From the IMG/VR virus record IMGVR_UViG_3300032562_000004, positions 124,001 through 188,000 of that record: a DNA stretch of 64,000 nucleotides. One strand, written 5' to 3'. The notes under the pieces are model-generated. The model was not told where the DNA came from and made no database searches. It worked only from the letters and a program-made list of their open reading frames with translations. This document shows positions 9,825 to 17,654 of this stretch, piece by piece. The position numbers and the translations under genes are program-made. Within the stretch, counting starts at the first letter, position 1. Each line of letters begins with the position of its first letter.

Positions 9825-10274
9825 ATGTCTAGAAATTCAGCTTATTCCGGAAAGTTCAAACCTAAAAATCCCCACAAGTATGTTGGTGATCCAACCAATA
9901 TTATTTACCGATCTTCGTGGGAATGTCGTTTTATGCACCATTTTGATGTATCGGATTGGTGTATAAACTGGTCAAGTGAAGAACTCGTGGTACCTTATAT
10001 TTCTCCTGTTGATAATCAATGGCACCGATATTTTGTTGATTTTGTTATAAAAGTTAAAAATGAAAAAGGTGAAATAAAAACTTGGATGATAGAAGTTAAA
10101 CCTAAAAAACAAACAAAAGAACCGGAAATAAAAAAAAGGGTTACCAAACAATATATCACAGAAGTTGTGACTTGGGGTGTAAATCAAGCCAAATGGAAGG
10201 CGGCCGAAGAATATTGTTTAGACCGTGGATGGAAATTTGTTATATTCACAGAGGATCAATTACCTAAGTTTTGA
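9825..10274 (+). CDS. gp4: Head completion protein gp4 (TnsA-like nuclease fold)
   Basis: YSGKFKPKNPHKYVGDPTNIIYRSSWE...WSSEE..VPY.SP.D...HRYFVDF...EVKP. Confidence 0.92.
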   Translation: MSRNSAYSGKFKPKNPHKYVGDPTNIIYRSSWECRFMHHFDVSDWCINWSSEELVVPYISPVDNQWHRYFVDFVIKVKNEKGEIKTWMIEVKPKKQTKEPEIKKRVTKQYITEVVTWGVNQAKWKAAEEYCLDRGWKFVIFTEDQLPKF

Positions 10275-10684
10275 CGCTTCAAAGCTTCTCTTTTTAACGC
10301 CATTTCTCTCATTCTTTGTATAGTTTCTTCACTAAATTTTCTATTTTTATTTCTTTGTTTTAAAGCTTCAAGTCGTTGTTCTTTGCCTTCTTCTGGCCAT
10401 TTTGAACCTTTTTTTGATTGACTTATTTTTTGTTTTGTTTCTTCAGAATGTGTTTTGCCTGTCCAATGATTAGTTTTACCTTTTAAACTATCACTAATAT
10501 TTTTTCGCTGCTCTTGTGTGTATTTGTAACCTGTGGTACCTTTTGTTTTTCCGCCACGGCCAACATTATCAACCTCAAAAATGGAAGATTCATAATCAAT
10601 ATAACGGTATTCAATTCCCAAGGCTTCGGAAAGAGATTTATTAATTTTTTCAAATTGTTTTGGTGTTATTGTAAAGGTATTCAT
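10256..10684 (-). CDS. NUMOD3-repeat protein with no recognisable nuclease domain
   Basis: GKTHSEETKQKISQSKKG-type motifs; TAAATA just upstream of the ATG at 10684. Confidence 0.6.
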   Translation of the reverse strand: MNTFTITPKQFEKINKSLSEALGIEYRYIDYESSIFEVDNVGRGGKTKGTTGYKYTQEQRKNISDSLKGKTNHWTGKTHSEETKQKISQSKKGSKWPEEGKEQRLEALKQRNKNRKFSEETIQRMREMALKREALKRQNLGN

Positions 10685-10713
10685 ACGTCTATTTATGTGA
10701 ACTAAATAACTAA

Positions 10714-11310
10714 ATGGCATCTAAATTTACCACACTCGCAGAAGAACATTCACAGGCAGATTTTGACCGACTGTCGAAAGATTCTTTATCTTGGATGAAA
10801 AAGAAAATCCAAGAGATTCGTTCACCAGCATCCATGGCATTAGGTATGGCTCGTGAGAAATCTAGGCAAACAAATACTTTTAAATTGGGTCAATTATATT
10901 GTTTTTATTATGATCCAAAAGGTAAAGATGATTTACCATATTACGATATATTCCCAATGGTATTGGTATTGGATCGTTATGAAGATGGCTTTTTAGGTTT
11001 GAACCTACATTATTTACCATACCGATACCGAGTGGCATTCCTGAAGAAACTCATGGATTACGCAGTCCTAAACAAAGATGATGAAATTAAAAGGTTGAGA
11101 GTCACTTACGACATTTTAACGACCTCCAGACGCCTCCGTGAGTTTCAACCTTGTCTCAAACGCTATCTTTTTGGTCATATTAAGTCAAGGTTACTTACCA
11201 TTCAACCGTCCGAGTGGGAAGTTGCTACATTATTGCCACTACAACAGTTTAGAAAAGCCAAACCTAATAAAGTCTGGCAAGATTCGATAGAAGAAATAAG
11301 GAAAAACTAA
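10714..11310 (+). CDS. gp2: DNA end protector gp2
   Basis: GQLYCFYYDPKGKDDLPYYDIFPMV...GFLGLNLHYLP. Confidence 0.92.
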   Translation: MASKFTTLAEEHSQADFDRLSKDSLSWMKKKIQEIRSPASMALGMAREKSRQTNTFKLGQLYCFYYDPKGKDDLPYYDIFPMVLVLDRYEDGFLGLNLHYLPYRYRVAFLKKLMDYAVLNKDDEIKRLRVTYDILTTSRRLREFQPCLKRYLFGHIKSRLLTIQPSEWEVATLLPLQQFRKAKPNKVWQDSIEEIRKN

Positions 11311-11895
11311 ATGGCCGGTACCATTAATGATTTTTTAGCCAGTTTTACCACAGATATTGCCAGACCGAATAGGTTTGATGTAACTATTCCTGTACCACTT
11401 TCTCTGGCAAACTATATCACTAGTGCCAGAAATTTAACTTTCCGTTGTGATACAGCGGTATTACCTGGTCGTTCATTTGAAACGGCAGATAAAAAAATGG
11501 GTTCGGCACCAATCGAAAAGTTTCCATACCATACAAATTATCAAGAAGCAACACTTACATTCATTCTATCTGATGATATGAATGAAAAGATTTTCTTTGA
11601 TGCTTGGATGGAATTAATGAATCCATCAACAACATATAACTTTCAGTATAAATCAAATTATGCTGTTGATATTAGTATTAATCAGTATGATGTGAAGAAC
11701 AATTTAACTTATGCTGGTTTATTACAAGAAGCATTTCCAATTGATGTGAACCAATTGGACTTAGATTGGGCGGCCGATGGTCACCATAAACTGGCGGTAG
11801 TATTTGCTTATCGTCAATGGAGCAATAATTCTGTTAGTTCACTTATTGAGAATCTTAAAACAGGTCTTATTTCTGGTTTGATTAATTCGATTTAA
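11311..11895 (+). CDS. Tail tube initiator / tail tube family protein (gp54/gp19-like)
   Basis: ARPNRFDV...[12 protein letters not shown]...KFPY...LTF..SDDM.EK.FF.AW. Confidence 0.8.
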
Positions 11896-12511
11896 TTGAA
11901 TTTCTTTTGTAATTTCTATATGTGGATGCACAAGACCTACCACAACATATACGATTTAAGTATTTTGGACTAGTAAAATCTTTATTACAGATTAAACAAT
12001 TTTTAACTAAACTACTACCATTTTCAATAAACCTTTGCTTGTGTTGTTTTTTTGTTTCTTCAGACCAAATACATTTTATTCCGGTATGAGATTTCGACAT
12101 TTTTAATATAGTTTCATCTTTATGCTTTTTGTTTTTCATACCATGTTGCCGGCCATGTTTATACTTTACACCCAAAAGAGATTTTCTTATTTTATCTTTA
12201 TGTTCTTGAGATTTTGGCTTATTGTTACCTGGAGCACCATCACCACCGTCAGTTTTATTTCTTAATATTCCAGTACCTAAATCTATTCTTCCATACCATT
12301 TAATCATTTTTCGTTCTAAAGCCAAAGCACCAATTTCTGTTAATTTTGATTCTATAATAACCACTCTATTTTTGTTTTTGGGTGGATAAACTTCACCTTT
12401 ACCTTTACAGTAAGCTCTATTATTTTTTCCTTTGCCAAAATAATAAGGCGATCCGTCTGGTCGTAGATAAGCATAGACATAAAAGACCAATTGGGGTATA
12501 TAAATAGACAT
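11882..12511 (-). CDS. GIY-YIG homing endonuclease with NUMOD3 motifs, inverted relative to neighbours
   Basis: [19 protein letters not shown]...[26 protein letters not shown]. Confidence 0.85.
12499..12506 (+). promoter_or_regulatory. T4-type late promoter TATAAATA upstream of gp26
   Basis: Exact TATAAATA about 100 nt upstream of the gp26 ATG. Confidence 0.65.
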
Positions 12512-12579: not shown

Positions 12580-12602
12580 ATAATTTAATAGTTGAGGACA
12601 TA

Positions 12603-13325
12603 ATGTTACCAAAGATTGATGCACCAGTATATGAATTAGATTTACCTTTATCGAAGAAACATATTCGTTTTCGTCCTTTTTTAGTAAAAGAACAGAAGAA
12701 TTTGATGATGGCATTAGAATCTGATGATAGAGAAACAATTGAAAGAAATATCCGTCAGGTTCTAACTAACTGTACCTTGACCGACAATATTGATGTTGAT
12801 AAGTTACCAGTAATTGATGTTGAGTTTTACTTTATTAACTTACGAGCAAGGTCTGTAGGTGAGGTAGTAGAAAACGAATACATCTGTACCAATGAAGTTG
12901 ATGGTAAAGCCTGTAATAATAAAATGAAAGGCACATTAAACTTATTGGACATTAAAGTTGATGTTGATCCTGATAGAAAAGATACGATTAAAGTAACCGA
13001 TAAGATTTCTATCAAGATGAAATATCCAGAGTTCTCTTTGGTTGATAAGTTAAGTAAGAAAGAATCGGCTGTTGATATTGCTTTTGAAGTAATGGCAGAA
13101 AGTGTTGAATGGATTTTTGATGGTGAACAATATTACTATGCTAATGAAACACCTAAAGAAGAACTCATGCAGTTTATTGAATCTTTGAATCAAGAACAGT
13201 TTGGCAAGTTGGAAGAATTCTTTAGTAATCTTCCAACAATGCACAGAACAATGGAAATGAAATGCGGTAAATGTGGTTTTGAGCATCGTATTGATATGGA
13301 AGGCCTCGAAAGTTTTTTCGGGTAA
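12603..13325 (+). CDS. gp26: Baseplate hub assembly protein gp26 (start at MLPKID)
   Basis: MLPKIDAPVYELDLP.SKK.IRFRPFLVKEQKNL; C-terminal CGKCG...GLESFF. Confidence 0.9.
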   Translation: MLPKIDAPVYELDLPLSKKHIRFRPFLVKEQKNLMMALESDDRETIERNIRQVLTNCTLTDNIDVDKLPVIDVEFYFINLRARSVGEVVENEYICTNEVDGKACNNKMKGTLNLLDIKVDVDPDRKDTIKVTDKISIKMKYPEFSLVDKLSKKESAVDIAFEVMAESVEWIFDGEQYYYANETPKEELMQFIESLNQEQFGKLEEFFSNLPTMHRTMEMKCGKCGFEHRIDMEGLESFFG

Positions 13326-13375
13326 TATTTTGTTATGACAATTTGAGAAATTACTATAAAACTAATTTCTCCTTG

Positions 13376-13516
13376 ATGCAACACCATAAGTATTCTCTCA
13401 CGGAACTTGAAAATATGTTACCGTGGGAGAGGGACATTTACGTGGCTATGCTGATTCAGTATATTGAAGAAGAAAACGAAAAAATAAAACAACAACAGGC
13501 TGCAGCAAGACGATAG
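13376..13516 (+). CDS. gp51: Baseplate hub assembly catalyst gp51 (possibly made as a -1 frameshift extension of gp26)
   Basis: Own translation MQHHKYSLTELENMLPWERDIYVAMLIQYIEEENE; not in the supplied ORF track. Confidence 0.85.
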   Translation: MQHHKYSLTELENMLPWERDIYVAMLIQYIEEENEKIKQQQAAARR

Positions 13517-15181
13517 ATGGATGATAAAAATAATTCGGATTGGAAAAAGGAATGGAAGGATTCAGGATTAGATCCTGATAAACCTGAAGATTTTAAAAAA
13601 ATCCAAAGCATTTACGCCAAGAAAATGGAAACAAAAATTCTTGGAGGGTTGGAAAATAGCCCAGCACAAACCGTTTCAAACATAATCAACAAACTTCATG
13701 GAATTGATAAACAAAAACCATTGGTTGAAGGTAAAGATTATACTATTGCACCTGGTGGTGAAGATGTTGAATTGAGTCAAGAATTTATTGATTCGATGAG
13801 AAAAAGGTCAAAAGAACTCACTAAGACCAAAGGTATGGAAAATATGTTGGGTAACCCAATTATGTCTTCCGTATTTAAAAAGAATCCAAAAAGAAATCAA
13901 AAAAATTCAAAACCGGAAGTAGCAGCTGATACTTCAGTAAATGAAGATAAAGAAAAACTTGCTCCTAAAAAAGATCCATTAATTAACCATGTTGCACCTG
14001 CTTCTGAATCCAAACTAAAGGCAGGAGATTCTGAAGGTGATATTCTAGGTAAAATCTTTAATTTGATGGTAGAAAAATACCACAGAGATGATGCTAATTT
14101 TAAAGAAGAAACCAAATATAAAGAAAAACTCAAAGAAAAAAAAGAAACTCGTTCAAAAGAGTTAATTGATTTATTTACACCAGGTAAAAAGAAACCAGGT
14201 AAAAGAAAGAAAAAAGAAAAAGAAGGTACTGCCGAAAAAGTAGAACCTAAAACTACTGGTACAACTAAAGGTGGAACAACATCAGCAGTAAGAGATACCA
14301 CCAATTCAGTTGTTTCGACTGGAACTAAAGCTGTAGTGGGTGTTGCAGCTGCAGGTGCTGCGGTAGTTGGTGTTGATGCTTTGGCCGCCAAGATAACTAA
14401 AAATGAAGGCGGTGGAAATCCAAATCAAGCAAACATTGTAAAGGGACATTCAGCAAAAGAAGCACAAATTATCAAAGGTAATATAGATGTTACTACAGGT
14501 AAAACTTTTGATAAATCATTAGAAGAAATGACCTTAGGTGAAGCTTATGATTTGGGAACTAGAAGAGGTAAATATTATAATGCTAAAGGTGCTGGTGCCG
14601 CATTAGGTAAGTATGGTTTTATGCCTATTGCGATTGAAGATAGAGGTAGAGCACTTTATGGAAAAGATTGGAGAAATGTTCCGTTTGATTCAAAAACTCA
14701 GGATGAATTAAACAAGTCACTAATTATAACCAATTTACAAAAATTACAAAAAGCAGGAATACCACCATCTGAAAGAAATTTATATTTGATGCACTTTTTT
14801 GGTAATACTGCACAAACTTCAGCATTTTTAAATTCTTCAGATGAAAGTAGTATGGCGCCCATTCTAGATATGTACAATCATGGCGCTACTGCAAATCCGG
14901 ATGTTGCCAAGTTAACTGTTGGCCAATATAAAAAAAGGTTTTTGGCTAAATTTGATGATACTCCCGCTGACTTACAAGTAAAATCAGTAGCACAACCAGT
15001 ATCAAATCCACCTACAACAATTCCAAGTAAAATTCCAGATGGACAATCTTCAAGTGCACCATCTACAACAATAATAAGTAAAACTACCAATGTAATTAAA
15101 GGTGGTACTACATATAGTATAACGGAAGATAATTCTCCTGATACTTCTCCATTAATCGACAGACAATATAATTTAAGATAA
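13517..15181 (+). CDS. Hub/tape-measure-region protein with a lysozyme-like domain
   Basis: ITKNEGGG...EMTLGEA...AALGKYGFMP...FD.KTQDEL segment resembles muramidase AAGKYQF motifs. Confidence 0.55.
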   Translation: MDDKNNSDWKKEWKDSGLDPDKPEDFKKIQSIYAKKMETKILGGLENSPAQTVSNIINKLHGIDKQKPLVEGKDYTIAPGGEDVELSQEFIDSMRKRSKELTKTKGMENMLGNPIMSSVFKKNPKRNQKNSKPEVAADTSVNEDKEKLAPKKDPLINHVAPASESKLKAGDSEGDILGKIFNLMVEKYHRDDANFKEETKYKEKLKEKKETRSKELIDLFTPGKKKPGKRKKKEKEGTAEKVEPKTTGTTKGGTTSAVRDTTNSVVSTGTKAVVGVAAAGAAVVGVDALAAKITKNEGGGNPNQANIVKGHSAKEAQIIKGNIDVTTGKTFDKSLEEMTLGEAYDLGTRRGKYYNAKGAGAALGKYGFMPIAIEDRGRALYGKDWRNVPFDSKTQDELNKSLIITNLQKLQKAGIPPSERNLYLMHFFGNTAQTSAFLNSSDESSMAPILDMYNHGATANPDVAKLTVGQYKKRFLAKFDDTPADLQVKSVAQPVSNPPTTIPSKIPDGQSSSAPSTTIISKTTNVIKGGTTYSITEDNSPDTSPLIDRQYNLR

Positions 15182-15183
15182 AC

Positions 15184-16635
15184 ATGGACTATCAAAAAGC
15201 CAGACAGGTCAGAAAAAAGAGCCTATTATCACTCATCACACAACAAAAGTTTGGTGAGGGTAAAAGTCTTGGTGCATCCGTTAGAGGTGCAGTTTCACAA
15301 AAGTTTCAAGCCAAAGCCAAAGGTATTAAAGAAAGCCTTGATCCATTAAATTGGGTTAGAAAAGCCACAGGTAAAGGTGCTTTCGGTGACTTTGCTGTTA
15401 CTGGTTTAGGTAGAATGTTTGGTCGTTCTGATAAAGATATCAAAGCTTTTGGTGGTATTGGTAGAAAAAAATTAAGAGGCAAAAAAGATCCACAGTTTAC
15501 TACTATTGCTGCAGGTCCACTTAAACCATTAAAACGTGGTGATGGTGTTGCTGATGTTTTGGCCAAGATGTATAACTTCATGATGCAAAATGAAGAAATG
15601 CACAAACTGAACTTAGAGATTGATAAAGCTTTCAAACAAGAAGAAATGGATGAGGACGACCGCAGACATGAAGAATTAGTCAAAACAATTAAGAAGTATA
15701 TGAAAGTGTCAAAATCTTCTACAGGTAAAGTAAGAGATGTTGGTGGTGGAGGTTTCTTTGATGGTATAATTGATATGGTTAAAGGATTAATTGGGAAAGC
15801 AATTGACGCACTGAAATTTTTAATTGCTCCATTATTAACATTTGTTTCTTCGATAGGCGCAATGGCACTTGAGGCGTTAGGAACTTTAGCTGCATTTCTT
15901 ATTACTCCAGCAGGCGTTGCATTTTTAGGACTTATTGCTGCTGGTACAATTGCTGCATGGATTGCTAAAATGATTGCTGCTGATCCCCAGGCAGCATTAG
16001 CAGGTAAAGGTCCTGTAGGTACAGCTGTTGCAGGACCTGGTGCTGAAACTCAATTGCCTTCTTCGGAAGAAGAACAAGCAAATAAATCTTTGGCCAACAA
16101 AGCAAAAGCAGTGGACAAAAAAGGCATCAAAAAGGCATCATTAGAAGAATTGGAGGCCAAACAACAATTGCTAATTGAAACTGGCGATCCAAGATACAGA
16201 GTAAAAAAAGGTCAAGGTGATGAATCTGATAAACTCAAAGCAAAACAACTTGATGATATAGAATCAGAAATTACTGCAAGAAAATCAAAACAAACTTCAC
16301 AAGCACCAAACAATAAAACAGAAACACCTACTGCTGTTCCAGTAAAATCAGCTTCATCTGAACCCACGCCAGAAAAAACGGATGTGTCTGTGCCTACGGC
16401 CGCAACCGAAACACCTAAAGTACAACCCGTACAACAGTCAGCCAATCCTCCTGTGCCTGTAGCTGCACCAAGCCAAGCATCAACAGGTGGTGATACTCAA
16501 CCAATCGTTTCTGTAAACAGTAGTACTAATACTATTGGTGATAAATCTCCACCTAAGATTGTACAAACAAATACGGCAAGAGCAAGAAATGGCGACCTTA
16601 ACCGATACTTAATGAATATTGCGGGTGTTGTTTAA
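15184..16635 (+). CDS. Tape-measure/gp29-like protein
   Basis: Charged helical N-terminus, hydrophobic central helices, low-complexity P/T/S tail; follows gp26/51. Confidence 0.5.
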   Translation: MDYQKARQVRKKSLLSLITQQKFGEGKSLGASVRGAVSQKFQAKAKGIKESLDPLNWVRKATGKGAFGDFAVTGLGRMFGRSDKDIKAFGGIGRKKLRGKKDPQFTTIAAGPLKPLKRGDGVADVLAKMYNFMMQNEEMHKLNLEIDKAFKQEEMDEDDRRHEELVKTIKKYMKVSKSSTGKVRDVGGGGFFDGIIDMVKGLIGKAIDALKFLIAPLLTFVSSIGAMALEALGTLAAFLITPAGVAFLGLIAAGTIAAWIAKMIAADPQAALAGKGPVGTAVAGPGAETQLPSSEEEQANKSLANKAKAVDKKGIKKASLEELEAKQQLLIETGDPRYRVKKGQGDESDKLKAKQLDDIESEITARKSKQTSQAPNNKTETPTAVPVKSASSEPTPEKTDVSVPTAATETPKVQPVQQSANPPVPVAAPSQASTGGDTQPIVSVNSSTNTIGDKSPPKIVQTNTARARNGDLNRYLMNIAGVV

Positions 16636-16683: not shown

Positions 16684-17577
16684 TTAATCTTCTTCTGCTA
16701 GTTTAGCAAAATAACTCAAGTCATCTTCATCAGATGTATCATCTTTAAATGGTGAATCTTCTGCTACTGCTTTAGGTGCAGAAAACTCTTTTGCTTTAAC
16801 TTGTTCTACGGTTGTCTTTGGTGCTTCACCATTGAGACCAAGAACTTTATCAAGGCGTTTCTTCAACTCATCATAAGACTTGAATTCTTTATCAGCAATC
16901 AAATCACTTAGAGCGAATTCACGCTTATAAACATCTTCCATCTGACCATCATCTTCAAATAATGCTGATGGTGATTCAAATTCAGACTTATCATAATTCT
17001 GATAACCTTCTACTTTACGAATCTTCAACTTAAAGTTAGCACCTTTCCACATATCAAATGGATTGATTGCTTGTTCATCTTCAAACTGAGGGTTCATTGC
17101 TTCGGAGATTTTATCAAAAATCTTTTTACCAAAACGGAACAACTTCACTTTACCTTCATTCTCAGGATGTTTTGGATCAGAAATGATGTATACGTTGGCA
17201 ATATAATCCAACTTACGTTTCTGTTTACGAACTACATCTTTGTTAGCTTCAATACCTGATTGCCATAATGTAGAATTGTGTTCACAAACAGGACATTGCT
17301 TGTTAAGTGTGGTTAAACAATTATCAATTAACCAACCACCAGGTCCTTGAAAACCATGTTTATGAATCTTGACCCATGGCAGAGCATCATCGCCATCTTT
17401 TTCGGATGCTGGTAGGAAACGAATAACGGCCATGCCATTACCTGCTTTATCTACTTCTGGCTTCCAAAAGTTTTCTGATTTATCTGAACCTGCTTCGGGG
17501 TTTTGATTGAGTGCCTCAACTGCTTGTTGTAATTTGCTGAGGTTGCCTGATTGGCGTTTGAGATTAGCGAAACTCAT
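16684..17577 (-). CDS. gp32: Single-stranded DNA-binding protein gp32 (start at MSFANLK)
   Basis: FWKPEVDKAGNGMAVIRFLPA...HGFQGPGGW.IDNCLTTL...CPVCE; acidic tail; AAGGAG RBS. Confidence 0.96.
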   Translation of the reverse strand: MSFANLKRQSGNLSKLQQAVEALNQNPEAGSDKSENFWKPEVDKAGNGMAVIRFLPASEKDGDDALPWVKIHKHGFQGPGGWLIDNCLTTLNKQCPVCEHNSTLWQSGIEANKDVVRKQKRKLDYIANVYIISDPKHPENEGKVKLFRFGKKIFDKISEAMNPQFEDEQAINPFDMWKGANFKLKIRKVEGYQNYDKSEFESPSALFEDDGQMEDVYKREFALSDLIADKEFKSYDELKKRLDKVLGLNGEAPKTTVEQVKAKEFSAPKAVAEDSPFKDDTSDEDDLSYFAKLAEED

Positions 17578-17654
17578 TGTACTTCTCCTTATTAACGGTG
17601 TATAAACGGAATATAAAAAACGACTTATCCAAAAACTACTCATAATCAACTACT

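What the first reader, a model, noticed from the sequence alone, without database searches (positions are those of the whole stretch)
13308..13516. Probable programmed -1 frameshift fusing gp26 to gp51 (G/GT-like)
gp26 ends GAA AGT TTT TTC GGG TAA, which contains a T TTT TTC slippery heptamer (13313-13319). The -1 frame is open from there: FRVIFCYDNLRNYYKTNFSLMQHHKYSLTELENM..., and the 20 residues before the first ATG look gp51-like (YYKTNF). The pair lies directly before tape-measure-region genes. This matches the lambda G/GT and P2 E/E' tail chaperone arrangement, which is not normally described for T4-like phages.
Basis: partly seen in the sequence, partly recalled or inferred. Interest (0 to 1): 0.7.

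Follow-up and report, generated by a model that had tools for sequence, protein, structure and literature searches.

The report
Tail-chaperone frameshift joining gp26 to gp51
The end of this marine T4-like phage's gp26 gene carries a deeply conserved slippery T TTT TTC site that very probably lets some ribosomes slip back one base and add the small "gp51" segment, giving the short and long tail-assembly chaperone pair found in most long-tailed phages; this is real but was already published for T4-like phages in 2022.

Summary
gp26 (12603-13325, PF12322) ends GAA AGT TTT TTC GGG TAA. The in-frame heptamer T TTT TTC lies at 13313-13319, and the -1 frame is open from there to 13516.

One heptamer is not beyond chance: the window has 33, with 33 expected. 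Its conservation is.
- All 82 distinct related junctions (35-78% gp26 identity) keep an in-frame T TTT TTN.
- The residue before it varies (S, N, D, A), but its codon always ends in T.
- The -1 frame is always open, and P of PWER lies exactly 34 codons downstream in 79/79.
- The -1 peptide is conserved from its first residues. 48/79 have no ATG or GTG before the conserved block, and one locus has no start codon before codon 55.

Best explanation: a programmed -1 ribosomal frameshift makes a short (240 aa) and a long (304 aa) chaperone, as in lambda G/GT.

It is not novel. Vladimirov, Gautam & Davidson (Virology 2022) identified gp26 and gp51 as the T4-like chaperones, and later papers cite that work for poly-T slip sites. 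Tape-measure adjacency remains unproven here.

The parts
12603..13325 (+). gp26-like gene, the short chaperone form (TAC-N, 240 aa); ATG preceded by GAGG at 12594-12597
13299..13303 (+). Weak Shine-Dalgarno-like GAAGG, encoding the E-G of the conserved LEGL motif, 9 nt upstream of the heptamer. In many relatives it is GGAGG or GAGGG. Possible upstream frameshift stimulator (inferred).
   Evidence: At this Glu codon GAG:GAA is 40:25, against 21% GAG in the gp26 bodies. Binomial P 1e-12, not corrected for relatedness. A strong SD-like motif lies within 20 nt upstream in 41/79 relatives, a weak one in 33/79 and none in 5/79.
13313..13319 (+). Slippery heptamer T TTT TTC (X XXY YYZ in the gp26 frame), the proposed site of tandem -1 tRNA-Phe slippage
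   Evidence: Present in register in 82/82 distinct related junctions: C 67, T 13, A 2 at the last position. The preceding codon is AGT, AAT, TCT, GAT or GCT, always ending in T. The first Phe codon is always TTT. Also present in Syn1, P-SSM2, P-RSM6, Melnitz, phiM19, two KVP40-like vibriophages and Aeh1. Absent in T4, GEC-3S, KARL-1 and Aeromonas phage 25, which have a separate long gp51.
13323..13325 (+). gp26 zero-frame stop codon TAA, one sense codon after the heptamer
   Evidence: Read directly from the sequence. The stop lies 0-3 codons after the heptamer in all relatives, most often one codon.
13319..13516 (+). The -1 frame extension (65 codons plus TAG), the C-terminal segment of the long form (TAC-NC, predicted 239 + 65 = 304 aa). 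Conventionally annotated as a small gp51 starting at ATG 13376 or TTG 13343.
   Evidence: phrog_634 (gp51) E 3.3e-30, matched from residue 3; it also matches the tail of phrog_150, positions 236-276 of 282. BLASTP to T4 gp51 residues 207-244, E 3e-5. Exactly 34 codons from the heptamer to P of PWER in 79/79. Codon periodicity in the -1 frame, with 0/79 stops against 75 and 77 in the other two frames.
13517..15181 (+). 554-aa downstream ORF; start overlaps the gp51 stop (TAGATG). Possible tail-associated lytic transglycosylase or lysozyme-like protein (lead only).
   Evidence: Only a weak phrog_6126 hit, E 2.5e-4. In the protein-atlas search the named nearest neighbours carry SLT or lysozyme families, at scores of 0.85 or less. 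No similarity to T4 gp29.
15184..16635 (+). 483-aa downstream ORF with a long hydrophobic Gly/Ala-rich central stretch; candidate tape measure (lead only)
   Evidence: One atlas neighbour cluster carries PF25671 T4_Tape_measure, score 0.90 at rank 9. There is no Pfam or PHROG hit and no BLAST similarity to T4 gp29.

Best explanation
gp26 and the small 'gp51' ORF form one tail-assembly-chaperone gene decoded in two ways.

Most ribosomes read gp26 to its TAA at 13323 and release the 240-aa short form (TAC-N).

A minority slip back one base. This happens when the P and A sites hold tRNA-Phe on UUU UUC of U UUU UUC (13313-13319). Both tRNAs re-pair perfectly with UUU UUU in the -1 frame. Decoding then resumes at CGG (13319) and runs to TAG at 13514-13516. 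The product is a 304-aa long form (TAC-NC): gp26 residues 1-239 plus 65 residues, junction ...LESFF|RVIFCYDNL...

By analogy with lambda G/GT and with T4 gp26/gp51, the shared N-terminal part would chaperone the tape-measure/hub assembly. The C-terminal segment, present on only a fraction of molecules, would recruit another tail component. Neither form would remain in the virion.

T4 and its close relatives make the same two architectures from two diverged paralogous genes, 26 and 51, instead of by slippage.

Shown here: the sequence anatomy, its conservation, and the homologies. Inferred: that slippage actually occurs, its efficiency, any stimulators (an upstream SD-like GAGG/GAAGG and the nearby stop codon; no conserved downstream structure was found), and the partners of each domain.
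For: 1. Heptamer conservation. All 82 distinct junctions from IMG/VR relatives (35-78% gp26 identity) have T TTT TTN in register. The preceding residue varies (S, N, D, A), but its codon always ends in T. The first Phe is always TTT, against 71% TTT in the gene bodies. Naive probabilities are 1e-18 and 1e-12, not corrected for relatedness. At least 30 of these loci (N, D or A before FF) cannot have been picked up through the ...SFF search pattern.

2. Phylogenetic breadth. The same heptamer and open -1 frame occur in cyanophages Syn1, P-SSM2 and P-RSM6, Methylophilales phage Melnitz, Sinorhizobium phiM19, KVP40-like vibriophages and Aeromonas Aeh1. tblastn matches in 533 phage records mostly begin at the first residue after the heptamer and overlap the annotated gp26 3' end.

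3. Spacing and frame. The distance from the heptamer to P of PWER is exactly 34 codons in 79/79. The -1 frame is open in all of them, whereas the other two frames carry stops in 75 and 77 of 79.

4. Coding upstream of any start. Information content by codon position in the linker is 1.01/1.24/0.58 bits. L8 and F16 are invariant and N15 is present in 73/79.

5. Start codons. 48/79 have no ATG or GTG before codon 11. L050 has no ATG, GTG or TTG before codon 55. L026 and L058 have none before codon 32. The 'ATG 13376' position is I, V, T or A in 17/79 loci (61/79 have Met). No candidate ATG has an SD-like motif upstream.

6. Natural in-frame equivalent. T4 gp51 (249 aa) is PF12322 over residues 1-201 (E 3.9e-52), the same family as gp26. 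Its C-terminus matches the small gp51 (phrog_634 E 1.2e-23; BLASTP E 3e-5 to the window's -1 peptide).

7. Natural controls. T4 (GAG TTC TTT), GEC-3S (AGT TTC CTT), KARL-1 (GAA TTT GTT) and Aeromonas phage 25 have a separate long gp51 and no heptamer.

9. Literature. T4 gp26 and gp51 are listed as hub assembly chaperones (PMC3004832). Short marine gp51 was noted as lacking about 200 N-terminal residues (PMC3037559). Vladimirov et al. 2022 is cited for T4-like TAC genes, poly-T slip sites, and a two-gene alternative in some T4-like phages (PMC10885494; PMC12846349).
Against: - There is no direct evidence for the trans-frame protein in this or any relative that I could access: no peptide, reporter or ribosome-profiling data.
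- No RNA run holding this sequence was listed, so slippage during transcription could not be examined.
- No conserved downstream stimulatory RNA structure was found (RNAalifold energy 0.0 over 79 junctions; mean z -0.9). The window's own upstream SD-like element is weak (GAAGG).
- FF is also conserved at the protein level, including in T4 gp26, so part of the T-run is explained by coding.
- 61/79 loci have an ATG at codon 19 and 30/79 have an ATG within codons 0-7, so a free-standing small gp51 may also be made.
- Pseudomonas phage Cygsa01 has a short gp51 with a TAATG overlap and no heptamer (AGC ATT TTC ACC TAA). The C-segment can therefore apparently be expressed on its own in at least one lineage.
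- The sequences are related, so the naive probabilities overstate the significance.
Confidence: 0.85

Rival explanations
1. There is no frameshift. The small gp51 is an independent 46-57-aa protein, initiated at ATG 13376 (or TTG 13343; in cyanophages at an ATG 2-5 nt after the gp26 stop) by translational coupling or reinitiation. The T-run merely encodes the conserved Phe-Phe.
For: GenBank records annotate it this way. An ATG at codon 19 is present in 61/79 and an early ATG in 30/79. Phage Cygsa01 has a TAATG overlap, a short gp51 and no heptamer. FF is conserved as protein even in T4 gp26.
Against: It does not explain why the third base of a variable preceding codon is always T, or why the first Phe is always TTT. 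It does not explain why T4-type gp26 genes keep FF or F but not the heptamer. It does not explain the conservation and codon periodicity upstream of the ATG, nor the fixed 34-codon distance from the heptamer. L050, L026, L058, L067 and others lack any usable start before the conserved block. No SD-like motif precedes any candidate ATG. T4 gp51 shows that the C-segment is naturally attached to a gp26-like domain. A free small gp51 made in addition to the fusion is not excluded.
Confidence: 0.08
2. The long form is made by RNA polymerase slippage on the T-run, inserting one extra U in a fraction of transcripts, rather than by ribosomal slippage.
For: The site is a homopolymer of 6 to 8 or more T. 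Transcriptional slippage is a known route to tail-chaperone-like and dnaX-like fusions in some bacteria and phages (own knowledge). No RNA data were available to exclude it.
Against: In 69/82 junctions the run is only 6 T long, shorter than runs known to give appreciable polymerase slippage (own knowledge). The run always starts at codon position 3, which is the register required for tandem tRNA re-pairing (X XXY YYZ) but irrelevant to polymerase slippage. TTTTTTA variants, which have the same heptamer as the HIV-1 gag-pol slip site (own knowledge), are tolerated.
Confidence: 0.05
3. Chance: a T-rich genome happens to have T TTT TTC near a stop codon, next to an overlapping small ORF.
For: TTTTTTC occurs 33 times in the window against 33 expected.
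Against: Conservation in register in 82/82 relatives and in several distant phage families, with a fixed distance to the gp51 motif.
Confidence: 0.01

Closest known systems
T4-like tail assembly chaperones gp26 (TAC-N) and gp51 (TAC-NC), as identified by Vladimirov, Gautam & Davidson, Virology 2022; 566:9-15
   Same: Same protein family: PF12322 and phrog_150 for the gp26 part, phrog_634 for the gp51 C-segment. Same poly-T slip site reported for TAC-N genes of T4-like phages (as cited in PMC12846349). Same idea that T4 itself encodes the short and long forms as two genes (as cited in PMC10885494).
   Different: Nothing essential; this window is one more instance. I could not read the paper itself, so I cannot say which of the following were already reported there: the invariant 34-codon spacing, loci without any start codon, the Aeh1 case, the heptamer-less pf16-like exception, and the absence of a conserved downstream structure.
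Phage lambda G/GT (and P2 E/E', Mu gp41/42): the conserved -1 frameshift in tail assembly chaperone genes (Xu, Hendrix & Duda 2004)
   Same: Two products share an N-terminus. The -1 slip occurs at a heptamer a few codons before the stop of the upstream ORF. There is no requirement for a strong downstream structure. The genes lie in the tail module. The N-domain fold resembles solved TACs.
   Different: No detectable sequence similarity. gp26 is larger (240 aa against about 140) and has extra beta-rich and Cys-pair (zinc-ribbon-like) parts after the TAC-like N-domain. The heptamer is U UUU UUC rather than G GGA AAG. Adjacency to the tape measure is not shown here, and in T4 genes 27 and 28 separate 51 from 29.
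T4 gene 51 (long, separate gene) with gene 26
   Same: T4 gp51 has the architecture predicted for the window's frameshift product: a PF12322 domain followed by the roughly 45-aa C-segment.
   Different: In T4 the two genes are divergently transcribed paralogues. Gene 26 ends GAG TTC TTT GAG TTA CTA TAA, with no slippery site, and is followed by gene 25.
E. coli dnaX -1 frameshift (A AAA AAG with an upstream SD-like element and a downstream stem-loop)
   Same: An SD-like GGAGG or GAGGG lies about 9-10 nt 5' of the heptamer in about half of the relatives, similar to the dnaX spacing as I recall it (own knowledge). A stop codon is close by.
   Different: No conserved downstream hairpin. The window's own element is only GAAGG. 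Here the frameshift product is the longer protein, whereas in dnaX it is the shorter one.

Membership tests
Phage tail assembly chaperone (lambda G/GT type) | [quoted passage not shown] | tested here: met
   The in-register T TTT TTN heptamer lies 0-3 codons before the stop in 82/82 relatives. The -1 frame is always open, and the extension is conserved from its first residues. This is comparative evidence only; the product itself was not observed.
Phage tail assembly chaperone (lambda G/GT type) | TAC fold of the N-terminal (G-like) part | tested here: met
Phage tail assembly chaperone (lambda G/GT type) | Gene lies immediately upstream of the tape measure gene | tested here: inconclusive
   The next ORFs (554 and 483 aa) have no Pfam or PHROG tape-measure match and no BLAST similarity to T4 gp29. 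The only support is a language-model neighbour cluster carrying PF25671, score 0.90. In T4 the order is 51-27-28-29.
Phage tail assembly chaperone (lambda G/GT type) | Needed for tail assembly, binds the tape measure and tube proteins, and is absent from the virion | not testable with these tools
   T4 gp26 and gp51 are listed as hub assembly chaperones (PMC3004832). A complex prediction of the C-segment with the gp19-like tube protein gave no answer.
T4 gp26 family (PF12322 T4_baseplate) | Significant full-length match to the family profile | tested here: met
   E 9.5e-58 over residues 8-239, profile positions 2-218 of 219.
T4 gp51 C-terminal segment (phrog_634) | Significant match of the -1 frame peptide to the gp51 profile and to T4 gp51 itself | tested here: met
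   phrog_634 E 3.3e-30, residues 3-63 against profile positions 59-119 of 121. BLASTP to T4 gp51 residues 207-244, E 3e-5.
dnaX-type stimulated -1 frameshift | Downstream stem-loop or pseudoknot 5-9 nt after the heptamer | tested here: not met
   RNAalifold finds no consensus structure over 79 ungapped junctions; the mean z of single folds is -0.9.
dnaX-type stimulated -1 frameshift | Upstream SD-like element about 10 nt 5' of the heptamer | tested here: inconclusive
   GGAG or GAGG is present in 41/79, and GAG is enriched at the Glu codon (40:25 against a 21% background). The window has only GAAGG, 5/79 have nothing, and the motif also encodes the conserved E-G.

The most novel reading that the evidence does not exclude
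The frameshift arrangement may be the ancestral state for all T4-like phages and may have been resolved in different ways. T4-type phages duplicated the gene into 26 and a long 51. pf16-like Pseudomonas phages lost the heptamer and express the C-segment alone. If so, the C-segment could act in trans. The fixed 34-codon linker and the upstream SD-like GAGG, not any downstream RNA structure, would then be the functional determinants of the slip. How much of this is already in Vladimirov et al. 2022 I could not check.
Probability: 0.3. Interest if true: 0.4.

Novelty: already known. Interest (0 to 1): 0.25.

Why it matters
For annotation, the small 'gp51' ORFs of marine, vibrio, rhizobial and Aeromonas T4-like phages are annotated inconsistently. 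They appear as 44-63-aa genes with arbitrary starts, or not at all, as in S-MbCM7 and Aeh1. They should be annotated as the -1 frameshift extension of gp26, with ribosomal_slippage.

For biology, the finding ties the long-puzzling T4 'hub assembly catalyst' gp51 to the universal short/long tail-chaperone pair. It also gives a clean natural experiment: frameshift, two genes, or a free C-segment. That experiment bears on why a fixed ratio of short to long chaperone is needed.

As a discovery it adds little, because the class was published in 2022.

Tried and rejected
- Conserved downstream stimulatory RNA structure: RNAalifold on 79 ungapped junctions found none. A terminator-like hairpin at 13305-13322 contains the heptamer itself and by eye is seen only in the window's closest relatives. 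I read it as a by-product of GAA A...T TTC complementarity.
- Natural in-frame gp26-gp51 fusions among close homologues: the top 120 of 3800 hits were all 240-242 aa. The natural 'fusion' turned out to be T4-type gp51 itself.
- Tape-measure identity of the downstream ORFs: BLASTP to T4 gp29, Pfam at E up to 10, and PHROGs were all negative. There are only atlas leads.
- RNA evidence on transcriptional slippage: no RNA run was listed.
- Predicted complex of the -1 peptide with the genome's gp19-like tube protein (L102:1480-2025:-): no answer, score 0.00; this is not evidence either way.
- Sequence search of solved structures with the gp26 profile: nothing. Foldseek against PDB: nothing significant.
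- The search for related loci with T4 gp26 returned only near-identical T4 contigs, so the controls came from GenBank records.
- The key paper (doi 10.1016/j.virol.2021.11.003) is not held in the library. Its content is known to me only through citing papers.

Full report
**What is in the sequence**

The window is bases 124001-188000 of a 235.8-kb virus record. Its closest named relatives are marine T4-like myophages: cyanophages, Methylophilales phage Melnitz and a Pelagibacter phage.

The ORF 12603-13325 has an ATG with GAGG 6 nt upstream. It is a full-length member of PF12322 'T4_baseplate' (E 9.5e-58) and of phrog_150 'baseplate hub' (E 1.9e-61), so it is gp26. It ends GAA AGT TTT TTC GGG TAA.

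The -1 frame is closed only 6 codons upstream of the Phe-Phe and open from there to TAG at 13514-13516. The 65 residues read after a -1 slip begin RVIFCYDNLRNYYKTNFSLMQHHKYSL. They match the gp51 profile phrog_634 at E 3.3e-30 from residue 3 onward. They also match the last 40 positions of the gp26 profile phrog_150.

A single TTTTTTC means nothing in this AT-rich DNA: there are 33 in the window against 33 expected.

**Conservation**

Using an alignment of five gp26 proteins (A1), I fetched 80 related loci from IMG/VR. Their gp26 identity to the window is 35-78%. I located each gp26 stop by tblastn.

- All 82 distinct junctions carry T TTT TTN in register, 0-3 codons before the stop. The last base is C in 67, T in 13 and A in 2.
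- The residue before Phe-Phe varies: Ser, Asn, Asp or Ala. Its codon is always AGT, TCT, AAT, GAT or GCT, never a C-, A- or G-ending synonym.
- The first Phe is always TTT.
- In the same genes' bodies, T-ending codons make up 74% for Asn, 80% for Asp, 55% for Ser and 32% for Ala. TTT is 71% of Phe codons.
- Naive probabilities are 1e-18 and 1e-12. They are overstated because the sequences are related.

One of the two search patterns was ...SFF, which could bias the set. However, the 30 loci with N, D or A before FF can only have come in through the other pattern.

Two junctions read TTT TTA (Phe-Leu). The amino acid changed while the heptamer survived.

**The -1 frame is coding from the heptamer on**

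- In all 79 complete junctions the -1 frame is open. The distance from the heptamer to the Pro of the conserved PWER motif is exactly 34 codons.
- Over linker codons 2-18, upstream of the ATG that the window has at 13376, information content by codon position is 1.01/1.24/0.58 bits. This is the same periodicity as in the gp51 core (1.26/1.69/0.65).
- 0/79 have a stop in this frame, against 75 and 77 in the other two frames.
- Leu8 and Phe16 are invariant, and Asn15 is present in 73/79.
- The 'ATG 13376' position is Met in 61/79 and I, V, T or A in the rest.
- 48/79 have no ATG or GTG before codon 11.
- L050 has no ATG, GTG or TTG before codon 55 of 66. L026 and L058 have none before codon 32.
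- No candidate ATG is preceded by an SD-like motif.

In the window the only possible start upstream of ATG 13376 is TTG 13343. It sits on the invariant Leu8, which is CTT, CTG or TTA in many relatives. A stand-alone gp51 therefore cannot account for the conserved N-terminal part of the segment in many of these phages.

**Breadth and natural controls**

The same anatomy is present in several GenBank phages:

| Phage | End of gp26 |
|---|---|
| Syn1, P-SSM2, P-RSM6 | AGT or TCT TTT TTC |
| Methylophilales phage Melnitz | AGT TTT TTT TAA |
| Sinorhizobium phiM19 | AAT TTT TTT |
| Two KVP40-like vibriophages | GAT TTT TTC GTA TAATG |
| Aeromonas Aeh1 | GAT TTT TTC GAC TGA |

Aeh1 was reported to lack gp51 (PMC3037559). 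It in fact has an unannotated gp51-like -1 ORF.

A tblastn search with the -1 peptide hit 533 phage records. Most matches start at residue 1, overlapping the annotated 3' end of gp26.

By contrast, four phages have a separate, divergently transcribed long gene 51. They do not keep the heptamer: T4 has GAG TTC TTT, GEC-3S has AGT TTC CTT, KARL-1 has GAA TTT GTT, and Aeromonas phage 25 has no Phe-Phe. T4 still encodes Phe-Phe, so the protein constraint alone does not produce the slippery pattern.

There is one exception. Pseudomonas phage Cygsa01 (pf16-like) has a short gp51 with a TAATG overlap and AGC ATT TTC ACC TAA. It has no heptamer.

**T4 gp51 is the in-frame equivalent of the predicted fusion**

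T4 gp51 (249 aa) matches PF12322 over residues 1-201 (E 3.9e-52). This is the same family as T4 gp26 (E 8.8e-64). It matches the whole of phrog_150 (positions 13-280 of 282). Its C-terminal part matches phrog_634. The window's -1 peptide aligns to T4 gp51 residues 207-244 (E 3e-5).

The product predicted here is gp26 residues 1-239 plus 65 residues, 304 aa in all. It therefore has the domain order of T4 gp51. Sullivan et al. 2010 had noted that cyanophage and marine vibriophage gp51 lack the first ~200 residues of the T4 protein (PMC3037559). The frameshift supplies them.

**Chaperone identity**

An AlphaFold2 model of the window's gp26 was built from 33 sequences. It has mean pLDDT 88.7 and pTM 0.82. 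It shows an alpha/beta N-domain, followed by beta-rich parts that carry two Cys pairs.

**Mechanism**

The most likely mechanism is tandem -1 slippage of two tRNA-Phe from UUU UUC to UUU UUU. Re-pairing is perfect.

I found no conserved downstream structure. This is as reported for lambda G/GT (own knowledge).

Two features may help:
- The zero-frame stop lies one codon downstream in most loci.
- An SD-like element is encoded by the conserved Leu-Glu-Gly, 9-10 nt upstream of the heptamer. This is similar to the dnaX spacing as I recall it (own knowledge). GAG is used in 40 of 65 Glu codons there, against 21% elsewhere.

The window itself has only GAAGG (13299-13303).

Polymerase slippage on a 6-T run is unlikely but untested, because no RNA run was listed.

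A free small gp51 made in addition, by reinitiation, is not excluded, especially in cyanophages with an ATG 2-5 nt after the stop.

**Context**

The downstream ORFs are 13517-15181 (554 aa) and 15184-16635 (483 aa). Neither could be assigned.
- The 554-aa ORF has SLT or lysozyme-like neighbours in the protein atlas, at scores of 0.85 or less.
- The 483-aa ORF has one neighbour cluster carrying PF25671 T4_Tape_measure, score 0.90.
- Neither has an HMM or BLAST match to T4 gp29.

A complex prediction of the C-segment with the genome's gp19-like tube protein gave no answer.

**Novelty**

My first literature searches on gp26, gp51 and frameshift found nothing relevant.

The PRFect paper (PMC10885494) then turned up. 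[quoted passage not shown] It summarises that paper as showing that some T4-like phages carry one short gene and one longer fusion gene instead of frameshifting.

PMC12846349 cites the same paper for poly-T -1 frameshift signals in 'TAC-N genes of T4-like phages'. The paper itself is not held in the library.

The phenomenon is therefore published. The window is a further, unannotated instance. Possible small additions are:
- the invariant 34-codon spacing;
- loci with no start codon at all;
- the explanation of Aeh1's 'missing' gp51;
- the heptamer-less pf16-like exception;
- the lack of a conserved downstream structure.

I cannot tell whether these are new.

**Verdict**

Novelty: already known. 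Interest: low to moderate.

Noticed in passing
L097 (Aeromonas phage Aeh1, NC_005260) about 2197-2400: Aeh1 was reported as the one T4-like phage lacking gp51 (PMC3037559). Its gp26 ends GAT TTT TTC GAC TGA, and the -1 frame encodes an unannotated gp51-like segment (...RLTLVNDSVYDLFNVNYEMHKEGWTIEELETTTPFERAIY...). Pro of PFER is at codon 33 instead of 34.
   Followed up: partly
L098 (Pseudomonas phage Cygsa01, PP179332) 1790-1982: This pf16-like phage has a short gp51 with a TAATG stop-start overlap. Its gp26 ends AGC ATT TTC ACC TAA, with no slippery heptamer. It is the only lineage seen with a short gp51 and no slip site.
   Followed up: partly
L085 (Synechococcus phage S-MbCM7, NC_023587) 1201-1390: The record annotates gp26 but nothing over the gp51-like stretch that matches the window. 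Several other cyanophage records list only 'baseplate hub' or 'hypothetical protein' there.
   Followed up: no
window 13305-13322: A terminator-like hairpin, CTCGAAA-GTTT-TTTCGGG followed by TAATATTTTG, contains the heptamer itself. By eye, comparable pairing is seen only in the closest relatives (L005-L010). No structure is conserved across the family.
   Followed up: partly
window 11882-12511 (-): A 209-aa ORF on the opposite strand is inserted between the tube-like gene (11311-11895) and gp26. By eye it has a GIY-YIG-like N-terminus (YVYAYL...YYFGKGK) and Lys-rich repeats like a homing endonuclease, but it has no Pfam hit at E 1e-3.
   Followed up: partly
window 10256-10720 (-): A 154-aa opposite-strand ORF between the gp4-like and gp2-like genes carries two NUMOD3 motifs (PF07460, E 6.6e-17). 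No nuclease domain was detected, so it may be a remnant or a stand-alone DNA-binding module of a homing endonuclease.
   Followed up: partly
window 12603-13325 (gp26 protein residues about 95-105 and 219-224): gp26 and its relatives keep two Cys pairs (C95...C105 and KCGKCG). T4 gp26 has CTC...CPEC and T4 gp51 has CPKC...CC. In the model these sit in beta-rich parts after the chaperone-like N-domain, which suggests a zinc-ribbon-like element not present in classical G-type chaperones.
   Followed up: no
window 13517-15181: The 554-aa ORF starts at the ATG overlapping the gp51 stop (TAGATG). It has a lytic-transglycosylase-like region at about residues 280-490, according to atlas structure neighbours. 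It may be the tail lysin rather than the tape measure.
   Followed up: partly
window 9825-11895 and 16684-17649: The gene order is gp4-like head completion (phrog_218), gp2-like DNA end protector (phrog_429), a short tube-like protein (phrog_45), gp26/gp51, two large unknown ORFs, then gp32 on the opposite strand (PF08804, E 2.8e-46). In phiM19, Aeh1 and vibriophage D490 a 'tail tube' gene also lies upstream of gp26: directly adjacent in phiM19 and D490, and about 0.5 kb of unannotated sequence away in Aeh1.
   Followed up: no
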